Shown one piece after another: positions 23,645 to 52,372 of a stretch of 64,000 bases of DNA. This DNA comes from Octopus bimaculoides (lineage: Eukaryota). The stretch lies in NCBI RefSeq assembly GCF_001194135.2, contig NC_069003.1:7430744-7494743 (forward strand). The letters run 5' to 3'. The translations under genes were made by a program, and so were the position numbers. The notes beneath the pieces were generated by a model. That model did not search any database. It was not told the origin of the DNA and worked only from the letters and a program-made list of their open reading frames with translations. How positions within the stretch are numbered: position 1 is the first letter of the stretch; the number at the start of each line of letters is the position of its first letter.

Positions 23645-23892
23645 ACAAGGGTAACGACCCCCTTCGGTCATGAATGACCGTGGGATTGCAACTAGAAAGT
23701 TTCCCCTCCAAGGCACAAGTCCAGGCAAGATTGTTTGTGGAAGACCAGCAGTCGTTCATCCATGTCTCGACACCACCAATGTTATCCAAGGGAACGGAAA
23801 AGGCCATGAGACAGCTCGACACCAGTGACGTCACAACTCATTTCTACAGCTGAGTGAACTGCAAGAACGTGAAATAAAGTATCTTGCTCAAG
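23645..23892 (-). mobile_element. SINE body with CTTGAGCAAG..CACTCAGCTG core, 5' truncated
   Basis: Core shared with SINEs at 4640, 7075 and 7360 but with a different 3' part. Confidence 0.65.
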
Positions 23893-23994
23893 TGGAAAAC
23901 AAAGTGAAGACTCTACAGTTCTATATTTAAGAGATGAGGAATTATTTACATTATTTACATTTGTCGGATATTTGTCCTCATCTTGTTTGTTGTT

Positions 23995-24040
23995 AACACA
24001 ACGTTTCGGCTGATATACCCTCCAGCCTTCGTCAGGTGTC
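23995..24040 (-). ncRNA. Minimal type I hammerhead ribozyme (best copy of the tRNA-headed family)
   Basis: GACAC CUGACGA A GGCUG(GAGGGUAUAU)CAGCC GAAAC GUU GUGUU; stem I 5 bp, stem II 5 bp, palindromic ACGU stem III. Confidence 0.8.
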
Positions 24041-24059
24041 TTGGGGAAATTTCGAACAA

Positions 24060-24215
24060 CACTGGAAAATACGAAAACTAAAAGAAGCAGCACATATGCT
24101 AGGACACAACAACCTCCTCAGCAGACCGAGCGCAGATATGAATAGCATATGGGAACCAGTATTGAGGAAGGATAGAAAAATAATAGATTTACAAGCCTTA
24201 AAATTCACCCCATAA
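24060..24215 (+). pseudogene. C-terminal 51 codons of a Penelope-like GIY-YIG endonuclease
   Basis: HWKIRKLKEAAHMLGHNNLLSRPSADMNSIWEPVLRKDRKIIDLQALKFTP*, resembling the RK.KEA..I..LNR..G..L..W motif; open frame. Confidence 0.7.
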
Positions 24216-24223
24216 TTGCCCAC

Positions 24224-24296
24224 GGGCATATGGCGTAGTGGTTAAGAGCGCGGGCTACTAACCCCAAGGTTCCGAGTTCGATTCACGGCAGCGACC
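24224..24296 (+). ncRNA. tRNA-like Pol III head inside the Penelope terminal repeat
   Basis: A box TGGCGTAGTGG 24231-24241, B box GAGTTCGATTC 24274-24284; imperfect cloverleaf, not a functional tRNA. Confidence 0.75.
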
Positions 24297-24381
24297 TGAT
24301 TAATAATAGTAATAATAATAATTATAATATAATAATAGTAACATCGTTAGGAATGAGAACCCAGGTTCGAAATTTCCCCAA

Positions 24382-24427
24382 GACACCTGACGAAGGCTGG
24401 AGGGTATATCAGCTGAAACGTTGTGCT
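24382..24427 (+). ncRNA. Minimal hammerhead ribozyme, slightly degenerate copy
   Basis: Same as 23995-24040 with CAGCU closing stem II and one stem I mismatch. Confidence 0.7.
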
Positions 24428-25849
24428 AACAACAAACAAGATGAGGACAAATATCCGACAAATGTAAACAATGTAAATAATGTAAAGTGAAGACTCCTAT
24501 CTACTTGGTGTATTATATATTATTTTGTTATTTTGTTAGAAAAAGAAATCATATTGGATACCAGTCATTCACCATTTCAGGCAAAATGGTCTTAGGTTGT
24601 TGGTTAGCTATGGTACCTGGCTGTATGGTAAAATAATTCTATAGCACAACAAACATTGGTTTTCATCTGCAAGATATCTCTGTCTTAAATGTGAAAGCAG
24701 AATTTGCTTTGCTTTTTCATTTAGTAAATTTCATTGAACAATTAAACTAATCAAATAGACAGATGATGACATCAAGAAGCTGACAACTAATTTTTGTGTT
24801 TTTTTATTTGAAGGATATTAAAATTGACAGAGTGACATCAGCAAAAATTTACCATTTAAAATTCATGAAGATACTTGATGAAGTCAACAGGAAAGTAGAG
24901 GTCTTTCAAGAGGGCAGAGTAAAAAAACCAAAAAAAAAAAAAAAAAAAAAACCAAAAAGAAAAAAAAAAGAGAAGCAAATGAGAGAACTGAAGCAAAAGC
25001 TGCTAAACATCACATCGGCTACAATTTGCAATCAGCTGTTGGCTTTGATAGACTCGTCAAATATTGAACAGCTGCAATACACAATTTGAAACTGATAGCT
25101 TAAAAACTATATTATTGCTGATGACACTGGCATTCTCTTCACTCAGTCTTTTTCTCCCTAACTCTCTCTCTCTCTTACTCACATAACTATAAAACCAATG
25201 CACAGCAACACCACTGTAAGAAAGAAATTGTCTTTTGCTTTTCCGTAGTTCCCTATTGGACTGTCATGTCCAACACAATTTTTTTTAACAATAAACATAT
25301 GACGACGAATTGAAACTACACCTCTGCTCATTCATTACCTCATCTATTCTCTCCATTCATTCTATTATCAAAGATCTTTACCACACAGAACCTCATCTGT
25401 TGGGATGAATTAACCTGGTGAATAAACACTGACATTACTGAACACAACCAACTTGCTAGACCAGAGTATTATTGCCATTGACTATTTCGTTTCATTTCAT
25501 TTTTATATTTTCACCTCTGGTGTTATTTCATTCTTTTACTGGTTTCAGGTATTAGACTACAGTCATGCTGGGGCAGAGTTCCAGTATGGTCGTAACCCAC
25601 TAACTGAAACTAATAAATGGTAAAAGATATGCATTTAATTTTATTCCATAGTTAAGGTTGTATAAAGCGTAACACTTGAAGTTGTTTCAGCATATTAAAG
25701 TTATTTTGATTATATTTTTGATAAGAACATCCAATTACTTGTCACAACAGGCAGAATAATATAGAAGACAGATATGGCTCACAAGGTGCATCAATGAGAT
25801 TAATAAATACAGATAAAAAGGAGGAGGGGAGAAATAATATATATATTAA

Positions 25850-26490
25850 ATTACGGTGTATGTAAACAAAGTTTGCATTTTTAGAAGTGCTGAGATGAAT
25901 TGAAATATATAGATATGGAAATATTTTATTCTCAAATGCATAATAATGATGCTGAATAGCATAAGTAGAATAGAACATTCTTATATTGCAGAAAAATTTG
26001 TTAGCAGCCAGCCATGAGACTCGAACTCACATCTCTGTGAGTGCCAGCCATAGTGCTTTACCTTTAAGCTAAACTGCCTACTAACAAACTCTTCTGCAAT
26101 TTTTGAATTTATAAATATAGCTTTTATAGCCGGATAGAATATCCTTATATTGCAGAAAAATTTGTTAGCTGCCAGCCATGAGACTCGAACTCACATCTCT
26201 GTGAGTGCCAGCCATAGTGCTTTACCTTTAAGCTAAACTGCCTACTAACAAACTCTTTGGCAATTTTTGAATTTATAAATATAGCTTTTATAGACACTAT
26301 ATGTGAAACTACAGTGTATGTAAACAAAATTTGCCTTTTTCAGAAGCGTTGAGATGTATTGAAATATGTAGATATAGAAATATTTTATTCTCAGACGCAT
26401 AATGATTATGCCGAATAGCTGAAATAGGAAAGAGCATCCTTATATTTCAGAAAAATTTGTTAGCAGCCAGCCATGAGACTCGAACTCATA
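25850..26490. repeat. Nested tandem duplication with a 164-bp unit containing a tRNA-like foldback
   Basis: Units start 25985 and 26149, partial third near 26440; 25850-25975 is repeated at 26310-26435. Confidence 0.85.
26007..26078 (-). ncRNA. tRNA-like sequence
   Basis: D arm GCTT/AAGC, T arm GTGAG-TTCGAGT-CTCAT, A/B boxes; irregular anticodon arm. Confidence 0.5.
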
Positions 26491-34090: not shown

Positions 34091-35344
34091 CATGCACATA
34101 TATGTACACATAATTGTCAGAAGCAACTTGTACATGCATATATGCTTGTATGCAAATACACATGCATTTACATATTCATACATACATAATGATGATGATG
34201 ACGATGATGGTGGTGGTAGTGGTGTTAGTGATGATGACAATGATGATGATGACTTAATAATGGTGTTGCTGGAATTGGTGATGATGATGATGATGATGGT
34301 GACGATGATGGTGGTGATGATGATAATGATGGCGATAGCAGCTGTAGTGGCAGTGATGGAGTTGTTTATCAGTAGTACATCTAAATCAACAGCAAACGCT
34401 TCTAAAAGACAAGACAAAGAATACACCAAACGGAAGAAACTAAAGACATCAATATATTAGCAGGCAGAGTAGGAATCAAGACAAGACAGCTATTACAATA
34501 TATTAACAGGCAGAGTAGGCATGAAGACAAGACAGCTATTGGAATTGTTTGGCAACAACTTCAAAATTGTTCACACAATTCTCTCTCTCATACTTCTCCT
34601 CATTGACCTAGCACCCTCCACATACATACATACACACAGGCCTCTCCAACAATCTAACTCCAACTTACATACACACACACTCAAACTTAGCTCTCTCTCT
34701 CTCTCTCTCTCTCTTTCACTTTCGCACTCCTACACATACACACATATGTATACTCCTACGCTTTCTCGCACACAGTACAGCTACTCCGGCAACAATGCCA
34801 TTACACAAATCATAAACGAATGAAAAGCCTTGTAGTTTGACAATAATACTTTTAGGTGAAAGTCAATATGGAATATCATTAAAGAGAAGTAACATTTATT
34901 TGGTCATTTCATTATTATTATTATTATTATTATTATTACTAAGGCAGCAAGGTAGCAGAACCATTAGCATTCGGGCAAAAGTTTTGCGGTATTTCATCTG
35001 TCTTTATGTTCTGAGATCAAATTTCACCTTGGTCGACTTTGCTTTGCATCATTTTGAGGTCGATAAAATAAGTATTAGTTGAGGACTGGGGTCGATGTAA
35101 TCGACTTGGCCCCTTCCCCAAACCTGTTGGCCTTATATCAAAATTTGAAACCATCATTATTATTATTATTATTGAGAGAGCAGTGCATGCCATCAAAGTG
35201 GCACGGGGTACAAACATACGAAGCCCAATATGCCCATGTCTAACTGTCTGATAAGGGTACACCAGGCACATGCATTACAACCACATGTGCACAACATGGT
35301 GAATTCATACATTATTTACATTAGACCTCATCTTGTTTGTTGTT

Positions 35345-35390
35345 AACACAACATTTCGGCTGATATACCCTCCAGCCTTCATCAGGTGTC
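35345..35390 (-). ncRNA. Minimal hammerhead ribozyme copy
   Basis: GACAC CUGAUGA A GGCUG..CAGCC GAAAU GUU GUGUU; CpG decay in stem III. Confidence 0.65.
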
Positions 35391-35739
35391 TCGAGAGGAA
35401 TTTTGAACCTGAGTTCTCATTCCTAAGGTATTTTTCGATATTATTATTATTATTATTATTATTATCATCATTATTATTATTATTATTCAGGTCACTGCCC
35501 GGAATCGAACTCGAAATCTTGGGGTAAGTAGCCCACACTCTTAACCACTACGCCATATACCCATGGGCCATATACCCACTACACCATAAGCCCACGGGCA
35601 TATGGCATAGTGGTTCAGAGCATGGGCTATTAACTCGAAGATTCCGAGTTCGATTCCAGGCAGTGACCAGAATAATAATAATAACAACATCGAAAAATAC
35701 CTGGGGAATGAGAGAACCCAGGTTTGAAATTTTCCCCAA

Positions 35740-35785
35740 GACACCTGATGAAGGCTGGAGGGTATATCAGCTGAAATGTTGTATT
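35740..35785 (+). ncRNA. Minimal hammerhead ribozyme copy, degenerate
   Basis: GACAC CUGAUGA A GGCUG..CAGCU GAAAU GUU GUAUU. Confidence 0.55.
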
Positions 35786-35831
35786 AACAACAAACAAGAT
35801 GAGGACAAATATCTGTCAAATGTAAATAATG

Positions 35832-36285
35832 GTATCAGATGTGGTGTGCAAGAGAGAAGATTACACTAGTATGGTCATGTGATGCATATGGATGAAAACA
35901 ACTGCATAAAGAAGTGCTGATGTCTAACTGTGAAAGGAACCTGTGGAAGGAGTAGACCCATGAAGACGTAGGACAAGGTGGTGAAGCATGGTCTTCAGAT
36001 ATTGAGTATCACAGTGGCAATGGCAAGTGACCAAGACTTTTGGTGATTGGCTGCACTGGAGTAGAGAGGTCAAGCTAAATGAAATCATATTTTTGACACA
36101 GTGCTGGTGACACATAACAGGCACCCAGTACACTTTGTAGAATGGTTGGCATTAGGAAGGGCATCCAGCAGTAGAAACGAAGCCAAAACAGACTGGAGCC
36201 TGATGCAGCTCTCTGGTTTACCATTTCCAGTCAAGCCATCCTACTTATGCCATTATGGAAACCAGATGCTAAATGATGATGATGC
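35832..36285 (+). mobile_element. RTE LINE 3' fragment
   Basis: GIRCGVQERRLH.., homologous to 50260-50940, (GAT)n tail. Confidence 0.8.
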
Positions 36286-37981: not shown

Positions 37982-38599
37982 GGCTTCTTTCAGTTTCTGC
38001 CAACCAAATCCTCTCAGAAGGTTTTGGTTAGCTTGAGGCTATAGTAGAAGATACTTACCCAAAGTGTCATGAAGTGGGACTGAACCTGGAACCATGTGAT
38101 TGAGAAGGAAACTTCTTACCACACAGCTACACTGGCGAATTATTAAATAATTCTTTCTAATTTTGGCACAAAGCCAGTAATTTTATGCAGAGGGGTAAAG
38201 TCGATTACATTGGCTATCGGTACTTGACTAGTACTTTACCTTATCATTAACCCCTGGAAAGGTGACCGTAGCAGGATTTGAACTCAGAACATAAAGAGCT
38301 GGGAGGAATGTCACTTAGTCTTATGTCCGATACATTAGTGATTCAACCAGCTCACCGCATTGTGTTTAACAAATATTTCTTTCTAATTTTGACACAAAGC
38401 TAGCAATTTCTACTAAAGGCATAAGGACTAAAATTTGGGGGGAAGGGCACTAGTCGATTGCATCAACCCCAGTGCGTAACTGGTACTTAATGACCCTGAA
38501 AGAATGAAAGGCAAAGTCAACCCTGGTGACATTTGAACTCAGAAAGTGAAGACAGACGGAATATAATAAATAATAATAATAATAATAGTAGTAATAAAG

Positions 38600-42238: not shown

Positions 42239-43170
42239 TCTTTTTATTATAGCCACACAGGGCTAAATACAGAAAATGGACAAATTACAAAGTAGAGCTT
42301 TTCTTGGGGNNNNNNNNNNNNNNNNNNNNNNNNNNNNNNNNNNNNNNNNNNNNNNNNNNNNNNNNNNNNNNNNNNNNNNNNNNNNNNNNNNNNNNNNNNN
42401 NNNNNNNNNNNNNNNNNNNNNNNNNNNNNNNNNNNNNNNNNNNNNNNNNNNNNNNNNNNNNNNNNNNNNNNNNNNNNNNNNNNNNNNNNNNNNNNNNNNN
42501 NNNNNNNNNNNNNNNNNNNNNNNNNNNNNNNNNNNNNNNNNNNNNNNNNNNNNNNNNNNNNNNNNNNNNNNNNNNNNNNNNNNNNNNNNNNNNNNNNNNN
42601 NNNNNNNNNNNNNNNNNNNNNNNNNNNNNNNNNNNNNNNNNNNNNNNNNNNNNNNNNNNNNNNNNNNNNNNNNNNNNNNNNNNNNNNNNNNNNNNNNNNN
42701 NNNNNNNNNNNNNNNNNNNNNNNNNNNNNNNNNNNNNNNNNNNNNNNNNNNNNNNNNNNNNNNNNNNNNNNNNNNNNNNNNNNNNNNNNNNNNNNNNNNN
42801 NNNNNNNNNNNNNNNNNNNNNNNNNNNNNNNNNNNNNNNNNNNNNNNNNNNNNNNNNNNNNAATGGTGTCGTCTTTCATTCTTACCATTCTTGCCACATT
42901 TACCCATTTTTTATTGAAACTTTCATTCGACAACACTTTCCTCTCTATCCTCATCCTCCTTTTCAAGTGGTACTTGAAAAAGTTGACGAGGGACTGACCA
43001 GAGAGGAAAGTGTTTGTTTGTAGACCTTTCAAACGCGTCCACCACACGCATTCTTTTGCCATAGCTATCAGTGTTACAAAAACCGTTTTCCCTTCCCGTT
43101 TAAAGGAAGGTGGCGGAACAATATTCACGATAGACTCGGCTGATAAATGGGCTCGTCCCACACGCCCACT
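42239..43170 (-). mobile_element. 5'-truncated L1/Tx1-like LINE with 16-bp TSD
   Basis: About 100 open codons (..VFVTLIAMAKECVWWTRLKG..LVNFFKYHLKRRMRIERKVL..FNKKWVNV) running into a gap; A-rich 3' end; TSD TATAGCTAGCTAGATA at 42223-42238 and 43171-43186; clade assignment from motif memory. Confidence 0.7.
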
Positions 43171-45552: not shown

Positions 45553-47030
45553 NNNNNNNNNNNNNNNNNNNNNNNNNNNNNNNNNNNNNNNNNNNNNNNN
45601 NNNNNNNNNNNNNNNNNNNNNNNNNNNNNNNNNNNNNNNNNNNNNNNNNNNNNNNNNNNNNNNNNNNNNNNNNNNNNNNNNNNNNNNNNNNNNNNNNNNN
45701 NNNNNNNNNNNNNNNNNNNNNNNNNNNNNNNNNNNNNNNNNNNNNNNNNNNNNNNNNNNNNNNNNNNNNNNNNNNNNNNNNNNNNNNNNNNNNNNNNNNN
45801 NNNNNNNNNNNNNNNNNNNNNNNNNNNNNNNNNNNNNNNNNNNNNNNNNNNNNNNNNNNNNNNNNNNNNNNNNNNNNNNNNNNNNNNNNNNNNNNNNNNN
45901 NNNNNNNNNNNNNNNNNNNNNNNNNNNNNNNNNNNNNNNNNNNNNNNNNNNNNNNNNNNNNNNNNNNNNNNNNNNNNNNNNNNNNNNNNNNNNNNNNNNN
46001 NNNNNNNNNNNNNNNNNNNNNNNNNNNNNNNNNNNNNNNNNNNNNNNNNNNNNNNNNNNNNNNNNNNNNNNNNNNNNNNNNNNNNNNNNNNNNNNNNNNN
46101 NNNNNNNNNNNNNNNNNNNNNNNNNNNNNNNNNNNNNNNNNNNNNNNNNNNNNNNNNNNNNNNNAAACAAATAATAAATGAGTATATGCATATATACATA
46201 CAAGTATGTGCATACCTACATCTACCTGTATATATAGATGCATATCTGGGTACAGGACATTGCAAACAAAACGTAGACAAAAAAATAATAATAACCAGAG
46301 TACAGAAAAACACACAGGCCACATAGAGAACATTTTCCTTCATCAGCTGCCCCCATTCTAACACAGGCGTTTCGAAGAGTTATGTGTGTATGCACACATG
46401 CATGCTTGTCTTGTCACTCTCCATTGCTGAATTCAAATACTCTCCTAAGTGTACCTTTCAGACATCTGTAATTACGAGCTAAACAAAAACACAAGACTTG
46501 AAGCTGTGCCCCTGACGTTCATTTCCTGTTTTATGAAAACAATTTTAACCCCTTTATCTCAGCATATTTCTAACATGCAGACTTTCATTTTTTTATATTG
46601 GTTTTATTTTTCAATACAATCAAGATTTTAGAAATGTTTCGTAAAATACCTCTCCTTTTTATTTATATACATTAGATGTGGCTGTGTGGTCGAGAAGTTT
46701 GGTTCCCAACCACATGGTTCTGGGTTCAGTCCCACAGCATAGCACCTTGGGAAAGTGTCTTCTATTAAAGCCCTGGACTGTACAAGGCCTTGAACAGATA
46801 TGATAGATACACACACTATATATACATATATTTTTTTTTTTCAGTCATGTGACTGCGGCCATGCTGGAGCACTGCTTTTAGTCGAACAAATTGACCTCAG
46901 GACTTATTCTTTTGTAAAGCCTAGTACTTATTCTATCGATGCCTTTTGCTGAACTGCTACTGTTATGGGGACGTAAACACACCAACATCAGTTGTCAAGT
47001 GATGGTGGGGGGTACAAACACAGACACACA

Positions 47031-47910: not shown

Positions 47911-48174
47911 CATATATACGACGGGCTTCTTTCAGTTTCCATCTACCAAATTCACTCACAAGGCTTTGGTCAGCCTGAGGCTATAGTAGAAGACACTTGC
48001 CCAAGGTGCCACATGGTGGGACTGAACCCGGAACCATGTGGTTGGTAAGAAAGCTACTTACCACACAGCCACTCCTGCGCCTAAAACTAAATTATTTTAC
48101 TAAGCGCTTTGTTATATTTAAAATTAATTGAAACAAACACAGAGCATCTCAACAGAAATATGGTAACGAAAGGG
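47534..48174. mobile_element. Complete piggyBac-like MITE (TTAA-CCCTTT...AAAGGG-TTAA) split by a SINE
   Basis: TTAA at 47530-47533 and 48175-48178; CCCTTT/AAAGGG termini. Confidence 0.8.
47657..48081 (-). mobile_element. Full-length young family C SINE
   Basis: Head GGCGCAGGAGTGGCTGTGTGG, B box GGGTTCAGTCCC, CCTTGGGCAAG CORE-like block; probable TSD TATAACT/TAAAACT. Confidence 0.9.
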
Positions 48175-51989: not shown

Positions 51990-52372
51990 TCCATAGACTG
52001 CGGCTATGCTGGAGCACTGCTTTAAAGAGTTTTAGTCGAACAAATCAACCCCAGGACTTTTTTTTAAGCCTAGTACTTACTATATCAGCTCCTTTTGCCG
52101 AACCGCTAAGTTGCAGAGATGGAACCACACCAACACCAGTTGTCAAGCGGTGATAGGAGTACAAAGAGAGGCACAAAGACACACACACACAAACATATAT
52201 ATATATATATATATACAATGGGCTTCTTTCAGTTTCTGTCTACCATTCACAAGGCTTTGGTCAACCTGAGGTTACAGTAAAAAACACTTGCCCATGTTGC
52301 CATACAGTGGGACTGAACCCGTAACCATGTGGTTGGGAAGTAAGCACTTTACCACACAGCCACTCCTGCACC
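51990..52372 (-). mobile_element. Full-length family C SINE
   Basis: Colinear with 47657-48081. Confidence 0.85.

What the first reader, a model, noticed from the sequence alone, without database searches (positions are those of the whole stretch)
23914..24483. Penelope-like element whose terminal repeat is a tRNA-like Pol III head + (AAT)n + hammerhead ribozyme
Seen: one TSD-bounded insertion holds an inverted about 120-bp terminal copy with a 30-nt extension, a GIY-YIG-like C-terminus, and right after the stop a tRNA-like head with A/B boxes, an AAT spacer and a minimal type I hammerhead (CUGACGA/GAAA/GUU, palindromic ACGU stem III). Known: Penelope-like elements carry minimal hammerheads in their pseudo-LTRs and often integrate with inverted terminal copies. 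Inferred: here the pseudo-LTR has an internal Pol III promoter, which could make a short self-cleaving RNA independently of the ORF. I do not know this combination as a described family. An old SINE head captured in the repeat is an alternative explanation.
Basis: partly seen in the sequence, partly recalled or inferred. Interest (0 to 1): 0.85.

Follow-up and report, generated by a model that had tools for sequence, protein, structure and literature searches.

The report
Penelope retroelement with built-in SINE-like tail
This is a truncated copy of a Penelope-like jumping gene whose non-coding tail carries, between the gene's stop codon and its hammerhead ribozyme, a tRNA-like promoter module conserved in relatives from at least three other sources, so the tail may be able to copy itself as a small parasite of its own parent element.

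Summary
Window 23914-24483 is one 570-bp insertion between perfect 13-bp target-site duplications. It contains a 27-nt extension, a 117-nt inverted tail copy, the last 52 codons of a Penelope-like element (PLE) ORF, a tRNA-related head with A and B boxes, an (AAT)n spacer, and a tail with a minimal type I hammerhead that meets the published PLE min-HHR criteria.

In this copy only the hammerhead tail is repeated, not the head. The head is nevertheless not a chance SINE insertion. In 9 of 9 related PLE 3' ends from four sources, an A/B-box module lies between the stop codon and the hammerhead. In 3 of 3 PLEs of other lineages it is absent.

ORF-less head-to-tail units exist (window 35311-35833 and an inverted copy in L005). 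They begin at a small covarying hairpin that ends 2 nt before the A box.

Best reading: a PLE clade whose 3' UTR/pseudo-LTR is itself a SINE-like unit, probably transcribed by Pol III and mobilised by the parent element. Pol III transcription and self-cleavage are inferred, not shown. I found no paper describing this layout. Verdict: new variant of a known kind, moderately high interest.

The parts
23901..23913 (.). left target-site duplication AAAGTGAAGACTC
   Evidence: 13/13 identical to 24484-24496
23914..23940 (-). 27-nt PLE 'tail extension', present at this end only. It contains UCCUCAUCU, which pairs with AGAUGAGGA of the tail to close a terminal hairpin.
   Evidence: Fold. A homologous stretch lies at the end of the L005 tail. 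One-sided 30-40 bp extensions are a described PLE feature (PMC8557442).
23941..24057 (-). inverted 5'-truncated copy of the element's 3' tail, including a hammerhead on the minus strand
   Evidence: 117 nt, 97% complementary to 24365-24481. 4-nt microhomology GAAC at the inner junction, 24054-24057.
23995..24040 (-). minimal type I hammerhead, the better-preserved copy: GACAC|CUGACGA|A|GGCUG-loop-CAGCC|GAAA|CG|UU^GUGUU. Helix I 5 bp, helix II 5 bp, all three CpGs intact.
   Evidence: descriptor hit, core alignment, pair counts
24058..24215 (+). last 52 codons plus the TAA stop of the PLE ORF (C-terminal end of the RT-EN protein)
24217..24228 (+). 5-bp hairpin TGCCCacGGGCA that ends 2 nt before the A box and starts 2 nt after the stop codon. 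It marks the 5' boundary of the SINE-like unit.
   Evidence: Covarying equivalents in L005, L006, L010, L001 and L014. ORF-less units start here.
24218..24296 (+). tRNA-related head with A box (24231-24241) and B box (24275-24285)
24297..24343 (+). (AAT)n-like microsatellite spacer whose length varies between copies
24344..24483 (+). linker plus 3' tail (HHR and AAGATGAGGACAA box), ending without the 27-nt extension
24382..24427 (+). minimal type I hammerhead, right copy. Predicted cleavage lies between 24422 and 24423. It has one CpG-to-TpG change (G10.1-C11.1 becomes G-U) and one helix I mismatch.
24484..24496 (.). right target-site duplication
35311..35571 (-). ORF-less head-(AAT)n-HHR-tail unit, older copy, left arm of a head-to-head inverted pair
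35581..35833 (+). ORF-less head-(AAT)n-HHR-tail unit, right arm. The two heads meet at the palindrome GCCCACGGGC.

Best explanation
Window 23914-24483 is a young, 5'-truncated insertion of a canonical (C-terminal endonuclease) Penelope-like element. It was made by PLE-type target-primed reverse transcription, which leaves a 13-bp TSD, an inverted partial copy of the tail and a one-sided 27-nt extension.

The element belongs to a PLE clade whose 3' UTR has a fixed order. In tandem copies this region is the inter-ORF pseudo-LTR. The order is: stop codon, small hairpin, tRNA-related head with A and B boxes, spacer, minimal dimer-type hammerhead, then a tail with a terminal hairpin.

I propose that this 3' module is a SINE nested inside its own autonomous partner. 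TFIIIC/Pol III would start at the hairpin, about 13-17 nt upstream of the A box, and read through the ribozyme and tail into flanking DNA. The resulting RNA of about 260-330 nt carries the same 3' tail that the PLE RT/EN uses, so it can be copied in trans. This would give the ORF-less units. On this view any truncated PLE copy that keeps its last ~270 nt stays a potential source gene.

As in other PLEs, the hammerhead lacks a stable helix III and should cut only when two copies pair through the ACGU palindrome, in tandem or in trans. A lone SINE RNA would therefore stay mostly intact.

Shown: the anatomy, the homology, the conservation and the covariation. Inferred: Pol III transcription, trans-mobilisation and cleavage.
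For: Anatomy, TSD and inverted arm.

PLE hallmarks match the description in PMC8557442.

[quoted passage not shown] It is found only at this insertion and in 0 of 100 shuffles. Across 13 sequences helix II is 93.8% paired with 3 of 5 pairs compensatory. The covariation score is 0.279 against 0.150 in shuffles (0 of 500 reach it), and slid controls pair at 12-52% against 85%.

The head is part of the element:
- Independent copies in sample ERZ21867824 align continuously from the ORF end through head and HHR to the tail. L006 and L010 are 90.6% identical over 734 nt; L005 and L008 are 84% identical.
- An A+B box pair lies between stop and HHR in winA, L001, L005, L006, L007, L008, L009 and L010 and in L014. 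These come from four sources.
- No such pair is found in 3 of 3 PLEs of other lineages (L011 Leptinotarsa, L012, L013), where the HHR follows the stop after 15-230 nt.
- The chance of such a pair in 300 random nt is 1.5e-4 to 2.4e-3.
- Invariant columns of the head alignment cluster in the A and B boxes, while the rest is barely alignable.

A discrete unit:
- ORF-less units at window 35311-35833 and the inverted unit L005:3225-3510 begin at a hairpin that ends 2 nt before the A box.
- Its stem differs between lineages but stays paired: TGCCC/GGGCA, TGTCCT/AGGACA, TGTCC/GGACA, GTGGC/GCCAC.
- 7 of 10 modules have no T4 run on the sense strand.

L014 shows a real head-to-tail tandem with the module between two ORFs.
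Against: - No transcript, Pol III occupancy or cleavage data were available.
- The heads are poor tRNAs. Standard ARAGORN calls none. Rfam tRNA scores 14.3 bits against a cut-off of 29 for the window head. It gives no tRNA hit at E<=1 over the whole of L009 or at E<=10 around the L014 head. The MFE folds are no better than shuffles.
- T4 depletion on the sense strand is weak: 3 runs seen against about 7 expected (my estimate from base composition, on the counts).
- Only two ORF-less occurrences were seen. Both are inverted copies next to another copy, so they could be by-products of PLE integration rather than of a separate Pol III RNA.
- No TSD was found around the 35311-35833 pair.
- Copy numbers in the source genome could not be measured, and two metagenome scans found nothing.
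- Helix I of the HHR is only 3 bp in several lineages.
- The host genomes are rich in tRNA-type SINE heads, so an ancient capture needs no special explanation.
Confidence: 0.55

Rival explanations
1. Passive relic. A tRNA-type SINE, or a tRNA, was captured once in the 3' UTR of an ancestral PLE and has been carried along since, with no promoter activity. The ORF-less units are ordinary 5'-truncated PLE copies.
For: - SINE heads are abundant in these genomes.
- The heads are degenerate.
- T4 avoidance is not significant.
- Only two ORF-less cases were seen, both next to another copy.
Against: - The A and B boxes are the most conserved columns across lineages whose heads are otherwise barely alignable.
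- The module is kept in 9 of 9 related copies from four sources.
- The 5' ends of the ORF-less units coincide with a covarying hairpin in two species. Random truncation would rarely give that.
Confidence: 0.22
2. The module acts at the RNA or chromatin level rather than as a promoter. It could be a tRNA-like fold in the PLE mRNA 3' UTR used for RNase P/Z-type end processing, RT recognition or export. Alternatively it could be a TFIIIC-binding site that acts as an insulator or targeting element for the element.
For: - The A and B boxes coincide with the D- and T-loop nucleotides that form the tRNA elbow.
- The T arm keeps 3-4 of 5 pairs by my hand inspection of the sequences.
- A covarying hairpin sits where the 5' acceptor strand would be.
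- A terminal hairpin suggests RNA-level recognition.
Against: - No acceptor stem is present, and no cloverleaf is found by ARAGORN, Rfam or MFE folding.
- Stems are less conserved than the box sequences.
Confidence: 0.18
3. Chance nesting. An independent SINE happened to insert just after a PLE fragment at this locus, and the two are unrelated.
For: The genome is SINE-rich. The head and AAT spacer occur only once in the insertion.
Against: - A single TSD pair bounds the whole 570 bp.
- The same order is seen in every related PLE copy examined, including other organisms.
- The head starts 2-3 nt after the stop codon.
Confidence: 0.03

Closest known systems
Canonical EN+ Penelope-like elements (Penelope/Poseidon/Neptune type) with min-HHR in the pseudo-LTR
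   Same: - RT plus a C-terminal GIY-YIG EN ORF in relatives.
- 5' truncation, inverted or tandem partial copies, and a one-sided 30-40 bp tail extension.
- A minimal dimer-type type I hammerhead with an extra nucleotide after A9 and a palindromic 15.2-16.2 (PMC8557442, PMC4209133).
   Different: A tRNA-related A/B-box head and a 5' hairpin sit between the stop codon and the hammerhead. Three PLEs of other lineages checked here lack them. None of the PLE papers I searched mentions such a module.
Sm-alpha / Sj-alpha SINE-like elements of schistosomes
   Same: Short non-coding retroposons that appear to be Pol III-transcribed and carry a hammerhead ribozyme. The ribozyme acts on multimeric transcripts (review PMC6765202).
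   Different: Those elements are free-standing and carry a canonical hammerhead with loop-loop contacts. Here the unit is nested in the 3' UTR of the autonomous element, the ribozyme is the minimal PLE type, and the partner is explicit. Sequence relatedness was not tested.
Metazoan non-LTR retrozymes
   Same: Non-autonomous hammerhead-bearing elements proposed to derive from and depend on PLEs (PMC7229834; bioRxiv 10.64898/2026.07.22.740005).
   Different: Retrozymes are direct tandem repeats of 170-400 nt expressed as circRNAs, and no tRNA or Pol III head is described for them. Here no direct tandem of the short unit is seen, and a Pol III-type head is present.
Classical tRNA-SINE / LINE partnerships (tail sharing)
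   Same: A tRNA-related head with A and B boxes plus a 3' tail identical to that of the autonomous partner.
   Different: The partner is a PLE, not a LINE, and the whole SINE body, not just the tail, is contained in the partner's 3' UTR.

Membership tests
Penelope-like element (EN+) insertion | ORF homologous to the PLE RT-EN protein | tested here: met
   Only the last 52 codons are present. They match PLE ORF ends (E=1.2e-10; 80% nt identity to L005/L008). Relatives carry RVT_1 (P0007) and PF01541. The RT itself is absent from this truncated copy.
Penelope-like element (EN+) insertion | GIY-YIG catalytic motifs | tested here: not met
   The fragment starts downstream of the motifs, and Pfam finds nothing on it. 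The motifs are seen, in decayed form, in the relative L001 and in the aligned relatives.
Penelope-like element (EN+) insertion | Inverted or tandem partial copy (pseudo-LTR) plus a one-sided 30-40 bp tail extension, with a TSD | tested here: met
   117-nt inverted arm, 27-nt extension and 13-bp TSD. The same layout occurs in L005, L006, L007 and L010.
PLE minimal type I hammerhead | Conserved core CUGANGA ... GAAA ... UH with helices I and II | tested here: met
   Helix II has compensatory changes. Helix I has only 3-5 bp.
PLE minimal type I hammerhead | Extra nucleotide between 9 and 10.1, G10.1-C11.1 pair, palindromic 15.2-16.2 (PMC4209133) | tested here: met
   The extra nucleotide is A. 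The pair is G-C in the left copy and G-U in the right copy. Positions 15.2-16.2 are CG.
PLE minimal type I hammerhead | Self-cleavage, as a dimer | not testable with these tools
   RNAcofold gives a dimer with intermolecular helix I, but this says nothing about catalysis.
Rfam hammerhead families | Score at or above the gathering threshold | tested here: not met
   No hammerhead hit even at E<=10. This is expected for variants without helix III.
tRNA-derived SINE (SINE2) | Internal A and B boxes at tRNA-like spacing | tested here: met
   Mismatches 0 and 2, spacing 33 nt. Chance about 0.002.
tRNA-derived SINE (SINE2) | Recognisable tRNA ancestry of the head | tested here: inconclusive
   Rfam tRNA scores 14.3 bits against a cut-off of 29. 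ARAGORN calls it only at a relaxed threshold, against 0 of 300 shuffles. No call is made for the L loci.
tRNA-derived SINE (SINE2) | ORF-less copies with a discrete 5' end and the partner's 3' tail | tested here: inconclusive
   Two cases were found, window 35311-35833 and L005:3225-3510, both starting at the hairpin. Both are inverted copies beside another copy, and no genome-wide census was possible.
tRNA-derived SINE (SINE2) | Pol III transcription | not testable with these tools
   The only indirect sign is that 7 of 10 modules lack a sense-strand T4 run.
Metazoan non-LTR retrozyme | Direct tandem repeats of a short HHR unit, expressed as circRNA | tested here: not met
   No direct tandem of the unit is present in the window; only inverted pairs are seen. 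circRNA is not testable here.

The most novel reading that the evidence does not exclude
A clade of Penelope-like elements, present in several animal genomes, carries a complete Pol III-driven, hammerhead-bearing SINE inside its own 3' UTR/pseudo-LTR. Every truncated copy would then remain a live small-RNA gene and a source of non-autonomous copies. This would give a concrete origin for hammerhead SINEs (Sm-alpha-like) and for the thousands of dispersed min-HHRs. It would also be the first explicit SINE-PLE partnership, and it would suggest how PLE-derived ribozyme RNAs get transcribed.
Probability: 0.4. Interest if true: 0.8.

Novelty: new variant of a known kind. Interest (0 to 1): 0.66.

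Why it matters
PLEs are the least understood class of retrotransposons. The role of their hammerheads is unknown, and so are the source of transcription for their short derivatives (retrozymes, dispersed min-HHRs) and the reason for their inverted and tandem insertions.

A conserved Pol III-type head with a defined, hairpin-marked 5' end, placed directly upstream of the ribozyme, gives a testable model for three things:
- how short ribozyme RNAs are made independently of the ORF;
- how SINE-like elements can be born from, and serviced by, a PLE;
- how a 5'-terminal palindrome could seed the head-to-head inverted copies.

It also matters for annotation. Such units would be split into 'SINE' and 'Penelope' pieces by standard pipelines in SINE-rich genomes.

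Tried and rejected
- Rfam at gathering and E-value thresholds gave no hammerhead hit and only a sub-threshold tRNA hit.
- Standard ARAGORN called no tRNA in any head.
- ARAGORN at -ps70 was rejected as evidence, because 6-30% of shuffles also score.
- Pfam found nothing on the 53-aa peptide or on a 149-aa composite from L001.
- The MFE fold of the heads is not better than shuffles.
- Sense-strand T4 depletion as a Pol III signature is too weak to use.
- No TSD was found for the 35311-35833 pair.
- An empty-site paralogue for the insertion was not found. The flank repeat copies stop short of the site.
- Two scans of JGI metagenome contigs, for the family-specific and the clade-level HHR+tail patterns, gave 0 hits. 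The pattern was shown to work on the window and on L007.
- The source organisms could not be identified.
- L003 (Logan) has a related ORF end and tail but no A/B pair at my threshold. This could be decay or true absence; I cannot tell which.
- A first HHR covariation test with 12 closely related sequences was not significant. It became clear only after adding L014 and two outgroup PLE hammerheads.
Full report
**1. What is at the coordinates**

The window is AT-rich, gap-ridden eukaryotic DNA full of microsatellites and SINE heads.

Positions 23914-24483 form one 570-bp insertion between perfect 13-bp direct repeats, AAAGTGAAGACTC at 23901-23913 and 24484-24496. From left to right it contains:
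- a 27-nt stretch (23914-23940);
- a 117-nt inverted copy (23941-24057) of the right-hand tail (24365-24481), 97% complementary;
- 158 nt of open reading frame ending in TAA at 24213-24215;
- a tRNA-like head (24218-24296);
- an (AAT)n-like spacer (24297-24343);
- a 21-nt linker, then the tail (24365-24483).

The inner junction of the inverted arm shares 4 nt (GAAC, 24054-24057) with the ORF sequence, as judged from homologues. The two arms differ at 3 of 117 positions, so the insertion is young.

**2. The ORF fragment**

The 52 codons (EQHWKIRKLKEAAHMLGHNNLLSRPSADMNSIWEPVLRK...) have no Pfam hit of their own.
- They match one database protein at E=1.2e-10 (P0001). On its contig this protein is the end of a decayed PLE endonuclease region with the CxC/GIY-YIG-type motifs.
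- A full HMMER scan from a neighbouring fragment found 1342 PLE-type proteins.
- In an alignment of their C-terminal regions, the window peptide sits at the extreme C-terminus.
- Relatives carry RVT_1. Several carry PF01541 or are named GIY-YIG endonucleases by their source.
- At the DNA level the fragment is 80% identical to the ORF ends in L005 and L008.

So it is the tail end of a PLE ORF. Calling it 'GIY-YIG-like' is correct only by homology to longer relatives.

**3. The hammerhead**

The better-preserved copy, on the minus strand at 23995-24040, reads GACAC CUGACGA A GGCUG GAGGGUAUAU CAGCC GAAA CG U U ^ GUGUU. The plus-strand copy (24382-24427) has one CpG-to-TpG change and one helix I mismatch.

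This meets the four features that Cervera and de la Pena list as typical of PLE min-HHRs (PMC4209133):
- a G10.1-C11.1 pair;
- a palindromic 15.2-16.2;
- a short helix I.

A descriptor encoding these rules hits only these two sites in 64 kb and nothing in 100 shuffles. Rfam's hammerhead models do not match, as expected for a motif without helix III.

Covariation was tested across 13 related and outgroup PLE hammerheads:
- helix II is 93.8% paired, with compensatory changes at 3 of 5 pairs;
- the overall score is 0.279, against 0.150 in shuffles (0 of 500 reach it);
- slid registers pair at only 12-52%;
- helix I is conserved for only 3 bp.

The ACGU palindrome can form helix III only between two copies, which is the dimer mode described for PLE ribozymes. 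Cleavage itself is not testable here.

**4. The head**

- The A box TGGCGTAGTGG fits TRGYNNARNGG exactly. The B box AGTTCGATTCA has two mismatches to GGTTCRANNCC. They lie 33 nt apart.
- Such a pair arises in about 0.2% of random 300-mers.
- Rfam's tRNA model aligns positions 8-63 at 14.3 bits, below its cut-off of 29.
- Standard ARAGORN is silent. At a relaxed threshold it calls the window heads, while 0 of 300 shuffles are called.
- The MFE fold is no better than chance.

The head is therefore tRNA-related in its promoter-like boxes and partial arms, but it is not a tRNA gene.

**5. Is the head part of the element?**

The answer is that the head belongs to the element.

- Contigs carrying the closest ORF relatives all show the same order: stop codon, head, spacer, hammerhead, tail. 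The loci are L001, L005, L006, L007, L008 and L010 from ENA sample ERZ21867824, L009 from ERZ23491260 and L014 from ERZ23491188.
- Within ERZ21867824, independent copies align continuously across the whole stretch. L006 and L010 are 90.6% identical over 734 nt, and L005 and L008 are 84% identical. The head therefore belongs to the family consensus.
- An A+B box pair lies between stop and hammerhead in all eight related copies scanned and in L014.
- It is absent from three PLEs of other lineages: L011 from the beetle Leptinotarsa, L012 and L013. There the hammerhead follows the stop after 15-230 nt.
- L003 has a related ORF end and tail but no A/B pair at my threshold, so one further relative does not show the module.
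- In the head alignment the invariant columns are those of the A and B boxes, while the rest is barely alignable.
- L014 is a true head-to-tail tandem. The module lies between the end of one ORF and the N-terminus of the next, which is the pseudo-LTR-equivalent region.

**6. A discrete short unit**

- The window holds a second locus (35311-35833) with two ORF-less head-(AAT)n-HHR-tail units in head-to-head orientation. They are old: 87% identical to each other, with CpG decay in the ribozyme core.
- In L005 the inverted copy next to the PLE is likewise a complete head-to-tail unit.
- In both cases the unit begins at a small hairpin that ends 2 nt before the A box. In the window insertion this hairpin starts 2 nt after the stop codon.
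- The hairpin recurs in most lineages with different but paired stems: TGCCC/GGGCA, TGTCCT/AGGACA, TGTCC/GGACA, TGTC/GACA and GTGGC/GCCAC.
- At 35311-35833 the two inverted heads meet at this palindrome.
- A start 13-17 nt upstream of the A box is where a type 2 Pol III promoter would initiate (textbook knowledge).
- Seven of ten modules have no T4 run on the sense strand. The depletion is not significant, at 3 runs seen against about 7 expected, which is my own estimate from base composition applied to the counts.

**7. The tail end**

- The 27-nt 'extension' is homologous to the end of the L005 tail.
- It supplies UCCUCAUCU, which pairs with the conserved AGAUGAGGA box to close a 9-bp terminal hairpin.
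- It is thus the true 3' end of the element. It is missing from the right end of this insertion, which matches the one-sided tail of PLE insertions described by Craig et al. (PMC8557442).

**8. Mechanism proposed**

- Shown: a PLE clade with a conserved hairpin, A/B-box head, min-HHR and terminal-hairpin 3' module, plus ORF-less units that begin at the hairpin.
- Inferred: the head is an internal Pol III promoter. It would make a ~260-330-nt RNA that contains the ribozyme and the RT-recognised tail, in effect a SINE nested in its autonomous partner.
- Inferred: the ribozyme cuts only when two copies pair.
- Inferred: the 5' palindrome may favour fold-back priming and hence head-to-head copies.
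- Rivals: a passive relic; an RNA- or chromatin-level role for the tRNA-like element; chance nesting, which contradicts.

**9. Comparison with what is known**

- PLE hammerheads, inverted and tandem insertions and tail extensions are known (PMC4209133, PMC8557442).
- SINE-like elements that appear Pol III-transcribed and carry hammerheads are known in schistosomes (PMC6765202).
- Non-LTR retrozymes have been proposed to be non-autonomous PLE derivatives (PMC7229834; bioRxiv 10.64898/2026.07.22.740005). Neither paper mentions tRNA heads or Pol III.
- Six full-text searches and the cephalopod repeat papers gave no description of a tRNA-type head inside a PLE 3' UTR.
- Repbase and Dfam could not be consulted, so prior curation cannot be excluded.

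I rate it a new variant of a known kind.

**10. Limits**

- The source organisms are unidentified.
- There was no genome-wide copy census.
- There are no expression or biochemical data.
- Two metagenome scans were empty.
- I did not build any full-length element consensus. Only 3' ends were compared.

Noticed in passing
window 25970-26293 (minus strand): Two copies of a 164-bp tandem unit, 96% identical. Each holds a tRNA-Ala(GGC)-like gene (26006-26078 and 26170-26242; Rfam 35.9 and 37.8 bits) followed by a T5 run. GGC is an unusual anticodon for a eukaryotic Ala tRNA.
   Followed up: partly
window 24217-24228; L005:4727-4740; L006:4812-4825; L014 about 915-927: A short hairpin that ends 2 nt before the A box, with lineage-specific but complementary stems. 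It occupies the place of the 5' acceptor strand and marks the 5' end of the ORF-less units.
   Followed up: partly
window 23914-23990 (minus strand); L005:4974-5040: A terminal hairpin, AGAUGAGGA ... UCCUCAUCU, that forms only when the 27-nt extension is present. The sequence is conserved between species, so there is no covariation to test.
   Followed up: partly
window 24363-24373; L006 about 5017-5027; L010 about 7004-7014: A second B-box-like motif (GGTTCGAAATT / GAGTTCGACAA) lies directly 5' of the hammerhead in the window and ERZ21867824 lineages. It is not present in L009 or L014.
   Followed up: no
L014:1047-1514: About 60 nt after the tail, a second PLE ORF begins, with an N-terminal region similar to those of P0055 and P0092. 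This is a genuine head-to-tail PLE tandem, with head, HHR and tail as the whole inter-ORF region.
   Followed up: partly
window 23834-23892, 7083-7141, 4645-4690, 7365-7412: The left flank of the insertion is itself a dispersed repeat with 79-92% identical copies elsewhere in the window. The PLE therefore landed in or next to an older repeat.
   Followed up: no
window 38086-38129, 48028-48071, 52319-52362 (minus); 46679-46733 (plus); also 881, 4564, 18593, 30701, 41001: Many other A/B-box heads are present. They include a four-copy family, T[GA]GCTGTGTGG ... GGTTCAGTCCC. None has a min-HHR by my descriptor.
   Followed up: no
window 42247-43161 (minus strand): An ORF interrupted by an N-gap. 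To my eye its end (..KECVWWTRLKGL..FFKYHLKRRMRIERK..) looks like the C-terminal part of a non-LTR retrotransposon protein. No search was run on it.
   Followed up: no
proteins P0157, P0160, P0170, P0021 (sample ERZ21867824): Called 'proteins' that begin with ..STTFRLICPPAFFRCLSN.., which is the translation of an inverted hammerhead tail, and then run into the PLE ORF. The inverted-tail plus truncated-ORF layout of the window insertion therefore recurs at several loci in that sample.
   Followed up: partly
L002, L003, L004 (Logan runs SRR6517992, ERR4031017, SRR21372859): The same decayed PLE 3' end with a related tail (..AACAACAAAGATGAGGACAAT) was assembled from three different sequencing runs. 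No A/B pair was detected between ORF and tail.
   Followed up: partly
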